Assembly: GCA_028534125.1 (NCBI GenBank)
Contig: CM052825.1
Span: forward strand, 25,978,001-26,042,000
Reading direction: 5' to 3'
From: Lama glama
Lineage: Eukaryota
Length of the DNA stretch: 64,000 nucleotides
The notes beneath the pieces are model-generated. The model ran no database searches. It was not told the DNA's origin and saw only the letters and a list, made by a program, of their open reading frames with translations. The position numbers were made by a program, and so were the translations under genes. Shown here piece after piece: positions 4,829 to 50,176 of this stretch. The first letter of the stretch is position 1. Each line of letters starts with the position of its first letter.

Positions 4829-6764
<1,936 letters not shown>

Positions 6765-6920
6765 NNNNNNNNNNNNNNNNNNNNNNNNNNNNNNNNNNNN
6801 NNNNNNNNNNNNNNNNNNNNNNNNNNNNNNNNNNNNNNNNNNNNNNNNNNNNNNNNNNNNNNNNNNNNNNNNNNNNNNNNNNNNNNNNNNNNNNNNNNNN
6901 NNNNNNNNNNNNNNNNNNNN
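6765..6920. other. Assembly gap (N run) covering the STUB1 start codon
   Basis: N run in sequence. Confidence 1.
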
Positions 6921-7199
6921 GGCCCGCCCTGCGCCCGCAGCCCGAGCCCGCGATCCGCTCGGGCCCGGCCCAGCACTCAGCCACCGGAACTTCCGGTCGC
7001 GCGGGTGGGCGGGGACAGAGGGGTGGGCGGGGCCGCGCGTGCACCCGAAGCACGTCGGAGGCGGGGCAGGCAGGGAGTACGCACTCAAAACAACACCACG
7101 CGCGGCATCTAAATCTGAGAAGCCCGGAGTTGGTCCTGACTGAATCCCGCCCGGGCGCTCCAACGCCGCACCTCCGAGGCCCCGCCTCGGCGCGTAGAC

Positions 7200-8476
7200 A
7201 TGGCGGAGTCCTGTGGGCTTTGGGACTGTGAGGACCCGAGCCGCTGGGCCGCTGTCCTGAAGCGCCACCCGGAGGTGCTGCGGACGCGCGCGGGCCCTCG
7301 GGGACGGTTGGAAGCCCTGGACAGATGGTAGGGCTGTGGAAGGATCGGGCGGGCGGGCGACTTTCTTTGTCCGGACTCCCCGTCACCGCCCTTCCCCAGG
7401 TATCGAGAGGAGTTGCCTGCGGCCATCAAGGGCCGAGTAGAGAAGCACGTGACACGAGATGACCTGGAGCAGTTGCTGGCGTGGAAACTGGCAGTGAGGC
7501 GCTTCCCACGTGGGGGGTGGAGTCTCCTCCAGGGGCGGGGCACAGCCTCGTGGGCGTGACTTCCTTCTGGGCGGGCCCTCCTCCTTGAGGTGGACCCTCG
7601 CGGCGTGGGCGTGGCTTCCTCCTGGGAGCCGAGACCCCGACGAGGTCTACCAACCCTGAACCCTGACACGACCTGGCCACAGAGGGGCCTTTTCCGGCCG
7701 CGCCTGCAGCAACTCGTGACCGTCAACTCCCCGGAGCTGGTGGTGCAGCGTTCGGCCGCCGCTTTCCGCCTCCTGCCAGACATGCATGCAGCGGTCATGG
7801 AATTGTGCGCTCTCCAGGGTGTGGGCCCCACTACTGCCTCGGGTTAGTCGGGAGACCTGGGCACGCCGGCGGGGTTTAGGGCGGGACCTGGCCTATTAGC
7901 GTCCTTATCTGTGAAGTTGCCTAACGGCTACGCACATGACACCACACCGAGATCATTGGTAAGGGTGGCCCCAGGCTGAGTCTGTCCTGGGACTGATGGG
8001 GCCTGAATGCTGGCCCTTCACTGCCCGCAGCGATCCTGGCTGCTGGAGCTCCCGAGGTGGCCGCTTTCATGTCTGAGGAGGCAGTGGCCGCAGTGCCTGG
8101 CTTGCCAGCCCTGCAGTACACTCTCAAGCACTATCTGCTGTACTTGGGCAGGGTGCAAGAGCGTGCCACAGCCCTGAGCCGAGGTGAGGAGACTGACGAT
8201 GGTGGCCAGGGAGGGCATCCAGGACCCTGGTCAGGGTAGAGTGTGCACAGCTATCCAGCAGGGTAGGGTGGCCAGGGCCCCAGAGACCCAGACTCCCTCC
8301 GCTCCTCCCTAGGCAGGGCCTCAGGGCTGTGGACCCCTCACCACGTGGAGACAGCACTGTGGACATAGGCTATGGGGCAGAAGCTGTGCCCTGATCTACT
8401 GCCTGATCTCAGTCCCAGCCCAGCCACCCCCGACAACACCAGGCCAGCCAAGAAGCGCAGGACCCAGGCGGACTAA
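7200..8476 (+). CDS. Amun/zgc:112496-like HhH DNA-glycosylase-fold protein; exons 7200-7327, 7400-7493, 7683-7842, 8031-8183, 8313-8476; in-frame TAG at 8366-8368 (196 aa truncated; 232 aa if that codon is read as Trp)
   Basis: Strong Kozak (gacATGG); four GT-AG introns with matching phases (2,0,1,1); HhH motif LCALQGVGPTTASAIL; WKLARGLFRPRL; C-terminal PAKKRR; AATAAA at 8581-8586. Confidence 0.85.
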
Positions 8477-9109
8477 CTTGGCTGTGGCCCAGAACCTGCT
8501 CACCTGCCATATGACCTTAGGCTGCAAGTGTCTCTGGACAGCAGGCTGGCAGAGCAGGAGGCTGGCTGCTGCAGAAGCTCAATAAATGCTTATTGTACTC
8601 ACATGTGATCCTGAGGCCCACAACTCTCCCCAGGGGCTCCCACCTCCCACACAGAGGTACCTCCTGCCAGATGCAGAGGATCAAGGTGGGGGAGCCCATG
8701 CTGCCCACATGGAGGGAAGGGCCCTCACAATTTGTTTAGCCAGTGGGGAGAGCCCAGATCAGCCCCCAAAGTACCAGTACAGGTCCCTGATGCTGTGTAA
8801 AATATTTATTCATTCTCCAAAAAGGCTCAGACTGCAACTCTTGGAGGAGAGGCTGGGCACAGTCTCCTCTGGGGCCACCCTTGGGGACCCCCAACACACA
8901 GCCCAGTCCAGCAGTCCTTCCCCCCAGGCCTGGGAGGGGGCAGCCAGGGCTGATGTAAGGCTTGGCCTGGACTTGGCCACTGGGGCCACCTGACCCCGCG
9001 GGGAAGAAGTAGCCTCCAGACGTACATTCACAGAGGGTGGACATGCAGACCTGCCTGGTGGCTGGCCCACAGATGCTGCACCCTGGCTATTGTGGCCCTG
9101 GGGATCCTG

Positions 9110-11341
9110 TCAGGGTGGCGGGGGGACATGGGCACCCAGCAGGTCATAGGCGAAGACGTTCCAGAAGATGGCGAAGAGCAGGAACGTGCCATAGGCAAGC
9201 AGCACCACCCACCAGCCACACTGGTCCCGCAGGCGCTCCTCGTAGCTGCGCAGGATGGTCAGGCCCATGCTGACACCCACCACTGCACCCGCTAGGTGTG
9301 CCATGAAGCTCGGTTGCGGGCCAGAGGCAGGCAGTGGCGGGGAGAAGCGCAGCCACACAGCCCGGCCCACCTCGGAGCTCACTGCAGAGGGAGGCAGCAG
9401 GTGAGAGATGCCCTAGCAGTAGGCTGAGGCCCACCCCCCGGGCCCTCTACTTACTGCACACCAGGGCCAGCACCATCCTTAGCAGCTTGTAGGGACACCT
9501 CATCCCAGCCCAGTTCTGAGAGAGCGTGAATAAGAAAAGCTGCGAGGCAGGCCTTGTGGACCCCTCCCCGCCCGCCGCTGGGGCTGCCCCATTACCATGA
9601 CGACATTGGCCAGGTGTGCGGAGCACAGGGCGTAGACCCCGCCGGAGCCCCCCACCACAGGGGCCCGCATGTCAGTAATGGAGACGGTCAAGGAACCTGT
9701 ATGAGCAAGGGGAGAGCTGTGAGGTGAGGCCTGCCAGTGAGGTGCCCAGGGTGCATGTGCCTGCCTCACCTGCCAGCACACCCGCCAGGTAGAGAAGGCT
9801 GATACGGAGCAGGCCGTGTACCATCTCCAGGGGCACCCCGATCATCAGCTGCAGGAGCGCATTGAACCCCAGCTGCTCTAGCCTGGTTGTGTGGGGGCAA
9901 ACAGGTACGAAGGGTGAAGTCCCCCTGCCCCCACCTCAAGGGGCCAAGCCCTCCTGATTCAATCTGAGGGGTGCCGGGGTGGGAAGCCCACTCACCCAAC
10001 ATGCATGAACATGTAGGTGACGAAGCGCCAGGCTCGAGCACGGTGGCCGGGGTGGTACACAAGGGGGCTCTTCATGTACTCGGGGTGGTAGGTCTGCAGC
10101 ACCCACTTGTTGAAACGGGCCCCGTAGCACAGGAACACAATGATCTGGAGGGCGACAAGCATTAAGGCCAGGCAGGGCCAGGGATGCTGGATGGAGGCTC
10201 CCCAGGGCAGGGTGGGGGCGGTGGGCAAGCAGGCCCACCTGAGCTAGGGTGACCGAGGCCATAAACACTGGGGGTGGGCAGCTGCGGTGCCGGTAGAAGT
10301 ACCAGTGGCGGTCCACCTCTCGGGGCAGGATCTCGTAGGCCACGTAGCGGACAAACCGCTTGTAGACACCCAGGCCCGGCTCGTCCAGCAGCCCATCCCG
10401 GGGCAGTGCCCGCTGTCCGTTGGCGATGGCCCGCTTGAAGCTGCTTGAGCGCTTGCTGCTGATCTGGGGGGGTGGGGCCTAGGCATATAGGCCACCATAT
10501 TCCCCCCATGGCTGCCCTGCCTAAGTGGTCCACCCCTTTCCTCACAGGGTCTGAGGCCCTGCCCCACGTCTACAGCCCTCCCAAGTGGGAAGGGCAGGGA
10601 GGAGGGGCCGCCTGCCCATCCCACTCCAGCCAGGGCACTGTGCCTGCTAAGGCCTGGGCCCCCAACCCAGCTGCCCAGCCCCCGTGCACTGACCAGGTCC
10701 ACCAGCTCCTGGTAGCAGACCTGGCCCCGCTCGTTGCTCTGGGCCAGAGCCACCAGCATGTCCAGCTTGGCAGGGTCCAGGGGCAGCTCATGGCTATGCA
10801 CCAGGCCAGTGAAGGTGTCCGCACCGATGAAGCCTGTATTTTCAGGGTCCAGCTGCTGGGGTTGGGGCAGGGTGGGGGCAGTGGCCAAGGCCTGAGGGTG
10901 GGCCCAGCCCCTAGACCACAGGGCTGGACCAGGTCAGCTGGGAGAGGCAGGTTCCAAGCACCTTCAGTCCAAGCCCCTGTGCCCACATGGTCACAGAAGC
11001 TCTGGACACTGGTGCCTGGGACCCAGGCCTCCAGCTTCTCCAGCTGTCTCCCCACCTCATTTCTGCCCTGCCCATCTTGGAAGGGTAGGGCCAAGGTCTG
11101 AGGACAACCACCCTCCCTCCCGCCCTTCACCCATCGCCGTGGTCTGGCTCGCCCTTTTCTGGGGTCTCAGGCAAGGGACCAAGGTCGTGCAGGGAGAAGA
11201 CTGAGCTGAGGGTCTCTGGGAGTTCCGTACCCCACAGCCCCCCCAAGGGCGGAAGGCCAAGTCGGGGGCGGTGCCGGCGCCCCACCCCCACCCCCCACGC
11301 ACCTGTTCCTGGATAAGCTGCAGCAGCGAGCTCCTATCCAT
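9110..11341 (-). CDS. RHBDL1: Rhomboid-related protein 1 (intramembrane serine protease)
   Basis: [13 protein letters not shown] / [15 protein letters not shown]; [12 protein letters not shown]; catalytic GGSGG and AHLAG; ends [10 protein letters not shown]; minus-strand AATAAA at 8805-8810. Confidence 0.96.
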
Positions 11342-12929: not shown

Positions 12930-13218
12930 NNNNNNNNNNNNNNNNNNNNNNNNNNNNNNNNNNNNNNNNNNNNNNNNNNNNNNNNNNNNNNNNNNNNNNN
13001 NNNNNNNNNNNNNNNNNNNNNNNNNNNNNNNNNNNNNNNNNNNNNNNNNNNNNNNNNNNNNNNNNNNNNNNNNNNNNNNNNNNNNNNNNNNNNNNNNNNN
13101 NNNNNNNNNNNNNNNNNNNNNNNNNNNNNNNNNNNNNNNNNNNNNNNNNNNNNNNNNNNNNNNNNNNNNNNNNNNNNNNNNNNNNNNNNNNNNNNNNNNN
13201 NNNNNNNNNNNNNNNNNN
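12930..13218. other. Assembly gap (N run) adjoining an L1 fragment
   Basis: N run in sequence. Confidence 1.

Positions 13219-48587: not shown

Positions 48588-50176
<1,589 letters not shown>

What the first reader, a model, noticed from the sequence alone, without database searches (positions are those of the whole stretch)
7200..8586. Hidden 5-exon gene for an HhH DNA-glycosylase-fold (Amun-like) protein, head-to-head with STUB1
Seen: the ORF track shows only fragments, but splicing 7200-7327, 7400-7493, 7683-7842, 8031-8183 and 8313-8476 at GT-AG sites gives one continuous frame: MAESCGLWDCEDPSRWAAVLKRHPEVLRTRAGPRGRLEALDRWYREELPAAIKGRVEKHVTRDDLEQLLAWKLARGLFRPRLQQLVTVNSPELVVQRSAAAFRLLPDMHAAVMELCALQGVGPTTASAILAAGAPEVAAFMSEEAVAAVPGLPALQYTLKHYLLYLGRVQERATALSRGRASGLWTPHHVETALWT*AMGQKLCPDLLPDLSPSPATPDNTRPAKKRRTQAD*. 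It has a strong Kozak context and its own AATAAA. Knowledge: LxxLxGVGxxTA is the helix-hairpin-helix motif of the EndoIII/MutY/OGG1/MBD4 superfamily. The LDxWY, WKLxRGxFRP and FMS(D/E)E motifs match my recollection of Drosophila Amun and zebrafish zgc:112496, and the human syntenic interval is annotated as a non-coding STUB1 divergent transcript. Inference: this is an uncharacterised mammalian nuclear DNA-binding or repair-like gene, co-promoted with the CHIP ligase and patchily lost in mammals.
Basis: partly seen in the sequence, partly recalled or inferred. Interest (0 to 1): 0.92.

Follow-up and report, generated by a model that had tools for sequence, protein, structure and literature searches.

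The report
Truncated camelid copy of Amun gene
This is a real five-exon gene, the mammalian counterpart of the fly nuclear protein Amun with a DNA-glycosylase-like fold, but in this camelid a stop codon in the last exon cuts off its conserved tail, so this copy looks newly crippled.

Summary
Five GT-AG exons (7200-7327, 7400-7493, 7683-7842, 8031-8183, 8313-8476, + strand) give one 232-codon frame. It runs collinear, without gaps, with 232-aa orthologues of cow, hippo, horse and bats.

The gene sits head-to-head with STUB1 (TPR and U-box exons on the minus strand) in a CpG island, and it ends at AATAAA 8581-8586.

The family is the vertebrate zgc:112496 / "STUB1-DT" protein. It is clearly homologous to insect Amun (38-42% identity, E 1e-39 to 2e-42). 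A confident AlphaFold model of the hippo orthologue is closest to OGG2-type 8-oxoguanine glycosylases (Z about 10), followed only by other HhH-GPD enzymes. The Schiff-base lysine is absent. The catalytic-position carboxylate is kept, as Glu here.

It is not "hidden": alpaca RefSeq and many other mammals already carry models, all uncharacterised.

This copy has TAG at codon 197 where dromedary and other mammals have Trp. That removes the end of the last helix and the nuclear localisation signal. It also has Thr at an otherwise invariant Ala in the hairpin. I read this as early gene loss, parallel to the decayed copies in cetaceans, elephants, rhinos and a colobine monkey.

Splice junctions and the TAG could not be checked in reads.

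The parts
6977..7199 (+). CpG-island promoter and 5' leader shared with divergent STUB1; the transcription start is not mapped. Places 6933-6976 were left out on purpose.
   Evidence: GC 0.70 and CpG o/e 0.94 over 6977-7400. STUB1 exon 1 lies just upstream on the minus strand, partly masked by N at 6765-6920.
7200..7327 (+). Exon 1 coding part: codons 1-42 plus 2 nt of W43. The start context is gacATGG and the donor is GT.
7400..7493 (+). Exon 2: completes codon 43 and covers codons 44-74. Contains the LD-x-WY / ELP motif and W71-K72.
7683..7842 (+). Exon 3: codons 75-127 plus 1 nt of codon 128. Contains RG-x-FRPRL and the first helix and hairpin of the HhH.
7708..7709 (+). Internal alternative acceptor AG. 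An exon 3 starting at 7710 skips the 9 codons RGLFRPRLQ. Used in alpaca model X2.
7803..7842 (+). Helix-hairpin-helix motif, codons 115-127 plus the first base of codon 128 (L-x-x-L-x-G-V-G-P-T-T-A-S).
   Evidence: Pfam HHH E 0.0045 on exon 3, below the cut-off. 31 of 53 family members match HHH.
7830..7832 (+). Codon 124 is ACT (Thr), where all 53 aligned relatives have Ala. By my motif alignment this is the position of the Schiff-base Lys of bifunctional HhH-GPD enzymes.
8031..8183 (+). Exon 4: completes codon 128, covers codons 129-178 and gives 1 nt of codon 179. Contains the second HhH helix, the Gly/Pro loop and the FMSEE motif.
8075..8077 (+). Codon 143 is GAG (Glu) at the canonical catalytic-Asp position. 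It is Asp in 46 of 53 relatives and Glu in 6, among them the cetartiodactyls.
8313..8586 (+). Exon 5: the reading frame ends at the TAG at 8366-8368. The ancestral frame continues to TAA at 8474-8476, followed by the 3' UTR.
8366..8368 (+). In-frame TAG at codon 197. The orthologues have TGG/Trp here, including dromedary.
8369..8476 (+). Ancestral codons 198-232 plus the ancestral stop codon (TAA 8474-8476), no longer translated. They cover the end of the last helix and the disordered tail.
   Evidence: 32 of 35 residues identical to dromedary and 31 of 35 to hippo. The model is ordered to about residue 210.
8441..8461 (+). Codons 222-228, RPAKKRR. This is the conserved C-terminal basic nuclear localisation motif, now downstream of the stop.
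   Evidence: Alignment A1: R-P-x-K-K-x-K/R conserved from oyster to mammals.
8413..8585 (+). Alternative exon 5, using the acceptor AG at 8411-8412. It skips the TAG and reads another frame to TAA at 8583-8585. It encodes, letter for letter, the tail of alpaca RefSeq isoforms X2 and X4; pig isoform X2 carries a homologous alternative-frame tail.
8581..8586 (+). AATAAA polyadenylation signal.
4832..6764 (-). Neighbouring STUB1/CHIP coding exons (TPR and U-box), divergent from this gene.

Best explanation
The interval holds the camelid orthologue of a deeply conserved animal gene. That gene is called Amun in insects, zgc:112496 in fish, and 'STUB1-DT' protein in opossum and hedgehog. It has five exons and is transcribed divergently from STUB1 out of a shared CpG island.

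The ancestral product is a 232-aa, all-helical, two-lobed HhH-GPD-superfamily protein, most like the minimal OGG2-type 8-oxoguanine glycosylases. It carries a C-terminal basic nuclear localisation signal.

Inferred mechanism: it binds DNA through the helix-hairpin-helix and flips a base or lesion into a pocket. It has no Schiff-base lysine (invariant Ala at that position) but keeps the carboxylate at the canonical Asp position. If it is catalytic, it would therefore be a monofunctional N-glycosylase without lyase activity. I put catalysis at about 0.5. The remainder goes mostly to a non-catalytic DNA or chromatin reader, as the fly Notch and Rad50 data would allow.

In this genome the copy has a nonsense codon (W197 to TAG) in the last exon. 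By the general rule for last-exon stops the mRNA should escape nonsense-mediated decay. It would then yield a 196-aa protein lacking the end of the last conserved helix and the NLS. Together with A124T in the invariant hairpin, this most likely marks a recent loss or weakening of function in New World camelids. It would be one more of several independent losses in mammals.

Shown here: exon structure, homology, fold, the lesions, and the neighbourhood. Inferred: promoter sharing, DNA binding, chemistry, and loss of function.
For: Exon structure:
- Exons and frame.
- Collinear full-length tblastn matches to cow, hippo, dromedary and opossum proteins.
- 148 hits to exon 3 alone in 1.84 billion proteins.
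- 487 hits to a full-length orthologue, with source names zgc:112496, STUB1-DT and 'HhH-GPD domain-containing protein'.

Amun link:
- The fly hit belongs to a cluster named Amun.
- Hippo orthologue against D. simulans and Megachile Amun gives 42% and 38% identity, E 1e-39 and 2e-42.

Fold:
- AlphaFold model of the hippo orthologue has pLDDT 91.1 and pTM 0.85.
- VIA-align neighbours: Tm1821 OGG Z 10.3 (167 aa, rmsd 4.1) and MjOgg Z 10.0. Ranks 2-17 and 19 of the wide search are HhH-GPD DNA glycosylases at Z 5.1-7.2; ranks 18, 20 and 21 are queuine-salvage DUF2419 proteins and a phage 5-PmdU glycinyltransferase, and Fic-domain proteins follow from rank 22 (Z 4.5).
- The Foldseek top list is the same superfamily.

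Conserved sites and lesions:
- Invariant G122-P123-A124-x-A126-S127, and a carboxylate at 143 in 52 of 53.
- Dromedary keeps Trp197 and the full tail.
- The model's last helix spans 187-203 and is ordered to about 210.
- Alpaca RefSeq gives only models that bypass the TAG.
- Decayed orthologue models occur in cetaceans, elephants, rhinos and Pygathrix, against 0-1 deviations at the 53 near-invariant columns in horse, bats, cow and hippo.

Context:
- CpG island.
- STUB1 and rhomboid neighbours.
- RNA-labelled runs hold 0.29-0.40 of the interval's 31-mers, against 0.95-0.98 in DNA-like runs. That is close to the roughly 0.44 I estimate (hand count, assuming a start near 7150) for exons only.
- Fly Amun is described as a nuclear Notch-pathway regulator with a glycosylase domain and as a Rad50 interactor.
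Against:
- The TAG could be an assembly error or a polymorphism.
- Apart from the TAG the frame is intact, and the post-stop codons are as conserved as the rest. Any loss must therefore be very recent, or the 196-aa product may still work. At about 22 kDa it could enter nuclei without an NLS.
- Pfam HhH-GPD (PF00730) does not match. Sequence matches to glycosylase families are sub-threshold only: PF21790 OGG-like, best E 3.8e-4, in 9 of 53 members.
- Z about 10 is middling for helical models.
- The fold was computed on the hippo orthologue, not on this protein.
- No biochemical data exist for any family member in the papers I could reach.
Confidence: 0.8

Rival explanations
1. The gene is fully functional in this species. 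Either the TAG is a sequencing or assembly error or a rare allele, or the 196-aa truncated protein, or the alternative exon-5 isoform, still does the job.
For: There is only one lesion and no frameshift. The codons after the stop are 32/35 identical to dromedary. The stop is in the last exon, so the mRNA should be stable. RNA runs hold an exon-sized share of the locus. The alternative exon-5 acceptor also appears in a pig isoform, so it is a pre-existing splice form.
Against: Alpaca RefSeq offers only TAG-avoiding models, which suggests an independent assembly also carries the stop. The lost segment 197-210 is modelled as ordered and is conserved down to insects. The NLS motif is conserved from molluscs to mammals. 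The alternative isoform drops the invariant W195 and the near-invariant W185, T186 and E191. A124T hits a 53/53 invariant site.
Confidence: 0.25
2. In camelids the locus is already only a non-coding divergent transcript of the STUB1 promoter, like the human lncRNA annotation, and the open frame is a relic without selection.
For: Both camelid lineages carry a substitution at an otherwise invariant HhH site: A124T here and S127L in dromedary. They also share E64D. The gene has decayed repeatedly in other mammals.
Against: Dromedary keeps the part of the frame present in its model (exons 2-5, 192 aa; exon 1 is not in that model), including Trp197. Window and dromedary differ at only 7 of 188 comparable residues, and neither has an indel or frameshift. 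With neutral drift since the Old World / New World camelid split I would expect more damage.
Confidence: 0.12
3. The family is not a DNA glycosylase-type protein at all. Either the HhH-GPD-like fold serves a free nucleotide or nucleoside hydrolase, as in the DUF2419/QNG1 queuine-salvage enzymes, or it is a purely protein-binding scaffold.
For: DUF2419 structures and a phage 5-PmdU glycinyltransferase also appear among the neighbours at Z 4.8-5.2. Pfam PF00730 gives no hit.
Against: DNA glycosylases score higher (Z 6-10) and cover the whole model. A canonical HhH DNA-backbone-binding hairpin is invariant. There is a conserved NLS, and fly Amun is nuclear and co-purifies with Rad50.
Confidence: 0.12

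Closest known systems
Drosophila Amun (CG2446), the insect 'protein amun'
   Same: The N-terminal domain of about 210 aa is homologous over its full length: 38-42% identity, E 1e-39 to 2e-42 between the hippo orthologue and insect Amun. They share the LD-x-WY, WK-x-x-RGKF-x-P, G-V-G-x-x-x-A-S-A-L-L-A and P-F-M-A-D-E motifs. Fly Amun is nuclear.
   Different: Fly Amun is 450-590 aa, with a long low-complexity C-terminal extension. The vertebrate protein is only the domain plus a short NLS tail. Insects have G-V-G-T-T-M-A where vertebrates have G-V-G-P-A-T-A. This window's copy is truncated at codon 197. Whether the Notch-related role carries over is unknown.
OGG2-type 8-oxoguanine DNA glycosylases (Thermotoga Tm1821 3n0u, M. 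jannaschii MjOgg 3knt/3fhf, S. solfataricus SsOgg 3fhg)
   Same: These are the best structural neighbours. They are of similar size (about 207 aa) and align end to end: Z 9.3-10.3, rmsd 3.8-4.2 A, 158-169 residues. Both have a two-lobed HhH-GPD architecture with the hairpin, a Gly/Pro loop and a carboxylate.
   Different: Sequence identity is only 10-16%. The family has an invariant Ala (Thr here) where, from my own knowledge of these enzymes, OGG2 and EndoIII carry the catalytic Lys, so no glycosylase/lyase chemistry is expected. The Pfam OGG-like model PF21790 matches only below threshold. The substrate is unknown.
STUB1-DT / LINC02867, a divergent transcript of STUB1 annotated as non-coding in human (known here only through the names carried by orthologues)
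   Same: Same genomic position, head-to-head with STUB1. Opossum and hedgehog proteins of this family carry the gene symbol STUB1-DT, and the opossum one is also called 'long intergenic non-protein coding RNA 2867'.
   Different: In many non-primate mammals the locus encodes an intact 232-aa protein. No human sequence was examined here, by instruction. A colobine monkey model is heavily disrupted.
S. pombe Mag2 / monofunctional HhH-GPD members (MutY, AlkA, MagIII)
   Same: HhH-GPD proteins without the Schiff-base lysine. They appear among the structural neighbours at Z 6-7. They are precedents both for monofunctional catalysis and for non-catalytic abasic-site binding.
   Different: No detectable sequence relationship. 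There is no iron-sulphur cluster motif, and the N-terminal lobe differs.

Membership tests
Amun / zgc:112496 family (no Pfam model) | Significant full-length sequence similarity to named Amun and zgc:112496 proteins | tested here: met
   Exon 3 alone finds the family, including a Drosophila Amun-group protein (P0124, E 3.3e-4 against 1.84 billion proteins). All five exons align collinearly to orthologues. Orthologue against Amun gives E 1e-39 and 2e-42.
Amun / zgc:112496 family (no Pfam model) | Family-invariant residues (L48 R55 W71 K72 G76 R79 N89 L118 G122 P123 A124 A126 S127 W195) | tested here: inconclusive
   13 of 14 are present in the window's exons. A124 is Thr.
Amun / zgc:112496 family (no Pfam model) | C-terminal conserved helix end and basic NLS (R-P-x-K-K-x-K/R) within the translated protein | tested here: not met
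   Both are encoded at 8369-8476 but lie downstream of the in-frame TAG at 8366-8368.
Amun / zgc:112496 family (no Pfam model) | Position next to STUB1 with conserved exon boundaries | tested here: inconclusive
   STUB1 is adjacent here, and orthologues are named STUB1-DT. Alternative or partial models of deer, yak, musk deer, dugong, pig and dromedary break exactly at the boundaries after codons 43, 74 and 178.
HhH-GPD superfamily (EndoIII/MutY/OGG/AlkA) | Match to Pfam HhH-GPD (PF00730) | tested here: not met
   PF00730 does not appear at E<=1 for 8 orthologues, or at E<=0.01 for 53 members.
HhH-GPD superfamily (EndoIII/MutY/OGG/AlkA) | Helix-hairpin-helix motif | tested here: met
   PF00633 HHH gives E 0.0045 on exon 3, below the gathering score. 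It matches 31 of 53 members with a best E of 6.4e-7, and precomputed PF00633 hits appear on many orthologues. The G-V-G-P-x-T-A-S core is invariant.
HhH-GPD superfamily (EndoIII/MutY/OGG/AlkA) | Two-lobed all-helical HhH-GPD fold | tested here: met
   Tested on the hippo orthologue as a proxy, with a model of pLDDT 91. The top neighbours are Z 10.3 and 10.0, and ranks 2-17 and 19 of the wide search are HhH-GPD DNA glycosylases. The Foldseek list agrees, at weak E of 0.1-1.
HhH-GPD superfamily (EndoIII/MutY/OGG/AlkA) | Gly/Pro-rich loop followed by a catalytic Asp about 19 residues after the hairpin Lys position | tested here: inconclusive
   The loop G-A-P-E is present. Position 143 is Asp in 46 of 53 members but Glu in the window and other cetartiodactyls. 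The mapping to the catalytic Asp rests on my motif alignment from knowledge of EndoIII (K120/D138) and hOGG1 (K249/D268), not on a residue-level structural alignment.
Bifunctional glycosylase/lyases (OGG1, OGG2, EndoIII/NTH) | Schiff-base Lys in the HhH hairpin (G-V/I-G-x-K) | tested here: not met
   Ala in 53 of 53 family members and Thr in the window.
Any active DNA glycosylase | Base-excision activity on DNA | not testable with these tools
   This needs recombinant protein and lesion-containing oligonucleotides.

The most novel reading that the evidence does not exclude
Amun/zgc:112496 proteins are an overlooked family of nuclear, OGG2-like, monofunctional DNA glycosylases (or lesion readers), present from sponges to mammals. 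Their base-flipping activity would feed into transcriptional control (Notch targets in flies) and the MRN/Rad50 axis. The family has escaped study because it was lost in human and mouse. It has been inactivated independently in several mammalian lineages: cetaceans, elephants, rhinos, catarrhine primates and, caught here at the first step, New World camelids.
Probability: 0.25. Interest if true: 0.75.

Novelty: new member of a known kind. Interest (0 to 1): 0.5.

Why it matters
**For the field.** The fold, an invariant DNA-binding hairpin and a conserved nuclear signal place this animal-wide protein family among the base-excision enzymes. Yet I found no study of any vertebrate member. The fly member is known only genetically, as a Notch modifier, and as a Rad50 interactor.

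Intact orthologues in horse, cattle, bats, marsupials and zebrafish make the biochemistry directly testable. The repeated losses in mammals give a natural experiment on when the function is dispensable.

**For annotation.** A locus that orthologue names link to a lncRNA (STUB1-DT) is a protein-coding gene in many mammals. The alpaca RefSeq isoforms of this gene are probably workarounds of a nonsense codon.

**For this window itself.** The result is modest: a known, annotated, uncharacterised gene that carries one fresh lesion.

Tried and rejected
**Searches that gave nothing useful**
- Pfam on the single exons gave only a sub-threshold HHH hit on exon 3.
- PDB sequence searches found no glycosylase. 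This covers exons 3 and 4, the 53-sequence profile (only uS13/ComEA HhH noise) and the distant member P0282.
- NCBIfam gave only HhH noise.

**Papers**
- 'zgc 112496' and 'LINC02867' returned 0 papers. 'STUB1-DT' returned one unrelated expression list.
- The original Amun paper (Shalaby 2009, PMC2728848) is not held. Statements about fly Amun therefore come from citing papers.

I had no orthologous DNA, so no dN/dS and no DNA-level intron-phase comparison.
No junction reads, no read-level check of the TAG and no transcription start were obtained. Those places were sent to no tool afterwards; the later composition statistics start at 6977.

- The joined five-exon protein was never sent to any search or fold tool. 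Exons were searched one by one by reference. The fold was computed on the 232-aa hippo orthologue P0171, which is 87% identical before the stop.
- No human sequence was fetched or compared.

**Readings rejected**
- Chance ORF, because of the homology.
- Selenocysteine or programmed readthrough: the codon is TAG, orthologues encode Trp there, and nothing supports readthrough.
Full report
**1. The observation**

- Exon coordinates are 7200-7327, 7400-7493, 7683-7842, 8031-8183 and 8313-8476 on the + strand.
- Each intron begins GT and ends AG.
- The three split codons read TGG, GCG and GGC.
- The start codon sits in gacATGG.
- AATAAA is at 8581-8586.
- The frame is 232 codons long, with one internal TAG at 8366-8368 (codon 197).

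**2. It is a real gene**

Exon 3 alone (53 aa), scored against 1.84 billion representative proteins, gave 148 hits at E<=1e-3. The best was 98% identical.

Source names for these proteins:
- 'uncharacterized protein' isoforms of Vicugna pacos;
- 'unnamed protein product' or 'uncharacterized protein LOC...' in reindeer, cattle, hippo, horses, bats, manatee, beaver, shrew, pig, marsupials, monotremes, reptiles and amphibians;
- 'zgc:112496' in many fishes;
- 'uncharacterized protein STUB1-DT' in opossum and hedgehog, and 'Long intergenic non-protein coding RNA 2867' in opossum;
- once 'HhH-GPD domain-containing protein' in a horse.

A local tblastn of the cow, hippo, dromedary and opossum proteins against 6921-9000 hits the five exons in order and in frame. 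There is no gap relative to the 232-aa orthologues.

Partial or alternative models of other species break exactly at the same boundaries:
- before Y44 in dromedary and white-tailed deer;
- before R75 in yak and in an RNA-assembly protein that reads in from the intron;
- after codon 178 in pig, musk deer and dugong.

This is indirect evidence that intron positions are conserved in mammals.

**3. Neighbourhood**

- Upstream on the minus strand lie ORFs with TPR and U-box domains. This is the STUB1/CHIP architecture.
- STUB1's first exon is partly masked by the N run 6765-6920.
- Downstream on the minus strand is a weak (sub-threshold) rhomboid-domain ORF, convergent with this gene.
- 6977-7900 is a CpG island (GC 0.66-0.70, CpG o/e 0.71-0.94). 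The signal collapses after exon 3.

A shared bidirectional promoter is therefore plausible but inferred; no transcription start was mapped.

**4. Expression**

The look-up of sequencing runs listed six runs on record as RNA, from two studies, plus further probable RNA runs. They hold 0.29-0.40 of the sampled 31-mers of 7000-8700. DNA-like runs hold 0.95-0.98. By my hand count (no tool run; assuming a transcription start near 7150), words lying wholly inside the five exons would make up about 0.44 of the stretch. The RNA share is therefore what a spliced mRNA would give.

This supports transcription but does not show the junctions. 

**5. What the protein is**

*Sequence matches*
- Pfam finds only sub-threshold HHH/HHH_5 matches.
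- For 9 of 53 members it also finds a sub-threshold match to PF21790, 'putative 8-oxoguanine DNA glycosylase OGG-like'.
- PF00730 (HhH-GPD) does not match.
- Sequence and profile searches of the PDB find nothing beyond generic HhH proteins.

*The Amun link*
- The 558-aa Drosophila hit belongs to a cluster whose members are named Amun in D. takahashii, D. pseudoobscura, D. busckii, D. virilis, tephritids, Glossina, Megachile and others.
- BLASTP of the hippo orthologue against D. simulans and Megachile Amun gives 42% and 38% identity over 177-210 residues, E 1e-39 and 2e-42.

*Alignment*

A 53-sequence alignment from sponge and oyster to mammals (A1) has 14 invariant and 39 nearly invariant columns. 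They include W71-K72, G76, R79, N89, the hairpin G122-P123-A124-x-A126-S127 and W195. It also has a conserved C-terminal R-P-x-K-K-x-K/R motif.

*Fold*

The joined window protein was not to be submitted, so I modelled the 232-aa hippo orthologue with A1.
- The model has mean pLDDT 91.1 and pTM 0.85. It has twelve helices and is ordered to about residue 210.
- Foldseek against the PDB gives only weak E-values (0.1-1), but the list is almost entirely HhH-GPD DNA glycosylases.
- VIA-align against 48,161 representative chains puts Thermotoga Tm1821 OGG first (Z 10.3, rmsd 4.1 A, 167 residues).
- Ranks 2-17 and 19 are EndoIII, OGG, Mag1, MutY, NTHL1, AGOG, AlkA, MagIII and MIG at Z 5.1-7.2; ranks 18, 20 and 21 are DUF2419 queuine-salvage proteins and a phage 5-PmdU glycinyltransferase. 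Unrelated Fic proteins appear from rank 22 (Z 4.5).
- The second look gives MjOgg Z 10.0 and 9.3 and SsOgg Z 9.3, aligned end to end.

Z about 10 is middling for helical models. The uniform superfamily of the neighbours, the full-length coverage and the invariant hairpin together make the HhH-GPD assignment well supported.

*Catalytic positions*

By motif alignment, from my own knowledge of E. coli EndoIII K120/D138 and human OGG1 K249/D268:
- Invariant A124 occupies the Schiff-base lysine position.
- Residue 143 (F-M-S/A-D-E), which starts the helix after a G-A-P loop, occupies the catalytic Asp position.
- Residue 143 is Asp in 46 of 53 members and Glu in 6, among them the cetartiodactyls.

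If catalytic, the family would thus be monofunctional. This mapping is not a residue-level structural alignment and should be checked.

**6. State of this copy**

- Dromedary has Trp at codon 197 and a full tail. The window has TAG.
- The lost part contains the last two turns of helix 187-203, the conserved x-V-A-x-K-L-x-P-x-L-L segment (recognisable even in insect Amun) and the NLS codons 8441-8461.
- The stop lies in the last exon, so nonsense-mediated decay is not expected (general rule, inference). A 196-aa product is likely.
- The window also has Thr at the 53/53-invariant A124. It shares E64D with dromedary, which in turn has Leu at the invariant S127.
- Most mammals with intact genes show 0-1 deviations at the 53 near-invariant columns.
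- Identity to orthologues is not lower after the stop than before it: hippo 0.89 against 0.87, dromedary 32/35 against 149/153. The lesion is therefore young.

The alpaca RefSeq isoforms X2 and X4 do not contain the canonical exon-5 frame. They splice from exon 4 (X2) or exon 3 (X4) to an internal acceptor (AG 8411-8412) and read another frame to TAA 8583-8585. The window encodes that tail letter for letter. A pig isoform carries a homologous alternative-frame tail, so it is a pre-existing minor form. It lacks W185-W195 and is unlikely to fold like the canonical protein.

The window differs from the alpaca RefSeq protein at one residue of exon 3 (Gly against Ser at 120). It therefore comes from another individual, assembly or closely related species. 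That is an inference.

**7. Patchy loss**

Added to A1, the available gene models show the following at the 53 near-invariant columns:
- dolphins and beluga: 5-8 substitutions;
- sperm whale: 29 deviations;
- elephants: 6 substitutions, plus loss of the RG-x-FRPRL segment and His at position 143;
- rhinos: a scrambled hairpin;
- Pygathrix: a scrambled hairpin.

No carnivore, murid, lagomorph or ape protein appears among the 120 best hits of a search in which every intact mammalian orthologue scores E<1e-90. This is absence from annotated proteomes, not proof of gene loss.

**8. Known biology of the family**

Citing papers describe fly Amun in three ways:
- as a nuclear regulator with a glycosylase domain that modifies Notch signalling in sensory-organ development (citing Shalaby et al. 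2009);
- as a genetic repressor of Notch signalling involved in gut stem-cell maintenance;
- as a new Rad50 co-immunoprecipitation partner.

I found no paper on the vertebrate gene. The original Amun paper was not available.

**9. Verdict**

The gene is, however, already modelled in public annotations, and this copy is damaged.

Most likely this is the New World camelid orthologue of Amun/zgc:112496. The ancestral protein is an OGG2-like HhH-GPD-fold nuclear DNA-binding protein that lacks the lyase lysine. Here it appears to be caught at an early step of lineage-specific inactivation.

I class it as a new member of a known kind, with interest 0.5. The family-level question is the valuable part: is this an unstudied animal DNA glycosylase, repeatedly lost in mammals?

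Noticed in passing
window 8411-8585 and 7708-7710: There are two internal alternative acceptors. An exon 5 starting at 8413 skips the TAG and shifts the frame. An exon 3 starting at 7710 skips the invariant RGLFRPRLQ. Alpaca RefSeq isoforms X2 and X4 use the first; pig isoform X2 has a homologous tail. Alpaca X2 uses the second; elephant models also lack the RG-x-FRPRL segment.
   Followed up: partly
window 8075-8077 (codon 143): The putative catalytic Asp is Glu in all cetartiodactyl orthologues seen (camelids, pig, ruminants, hippo, cetaceans). It is Asp in horse, bats, marsupials, reptiles, fish and insects. The cow and hippo genes are otherwise perfectly conserved.
   Followed up: partly
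proteins P0181, P0186, P0207, P0274, P0203, P0037, P0204, P0250, P0213 (no window coordinates): Orthologue models of cetaceans, elephants, rhinoceroses and a colobine monkey carry many changes at near-invariant sites or scrambled segments. This suggests independent decay of the gene in these lineages.
   Followed up: partly
window 6765-6920 and 12930-13218: There are two runs of N. The first covers most of STUB1 exon 1, including its start codon. They were left as they are, by instruction.
   Followed up: no
proteins P0278, P0281, P0282 and Atlas rank 4: Proteins of about 200 aa from JGI metagenomes align over the whole domain but lack the NLS tail. One of them matches Pfam DUF6308. The Atlas also lists a 193-aa plant (Streptophyta) cluster as a look-alike. 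The family may extend beyond animals.
   Followed up: no
window 9113-9382 (-): This is a C-terminal rhomboid-domain ORF (the RHBDL1 position), convergent with the Amun-like gene. Only about 530 bp separate the AATAAA from this ORF.
   Followed up: partly
one search hit list: There are no bird or crocodilian proteins among the 120 best hits, although turtles, lizards and snakes are present. This could be loss or an assembly gap in archosaurs.
   Followed up: no
window 48654-50144: An earlier first-reader note (s1-863724) reports three lesions in METTL26 in the same window. I did not examine it.
   Followed up: no
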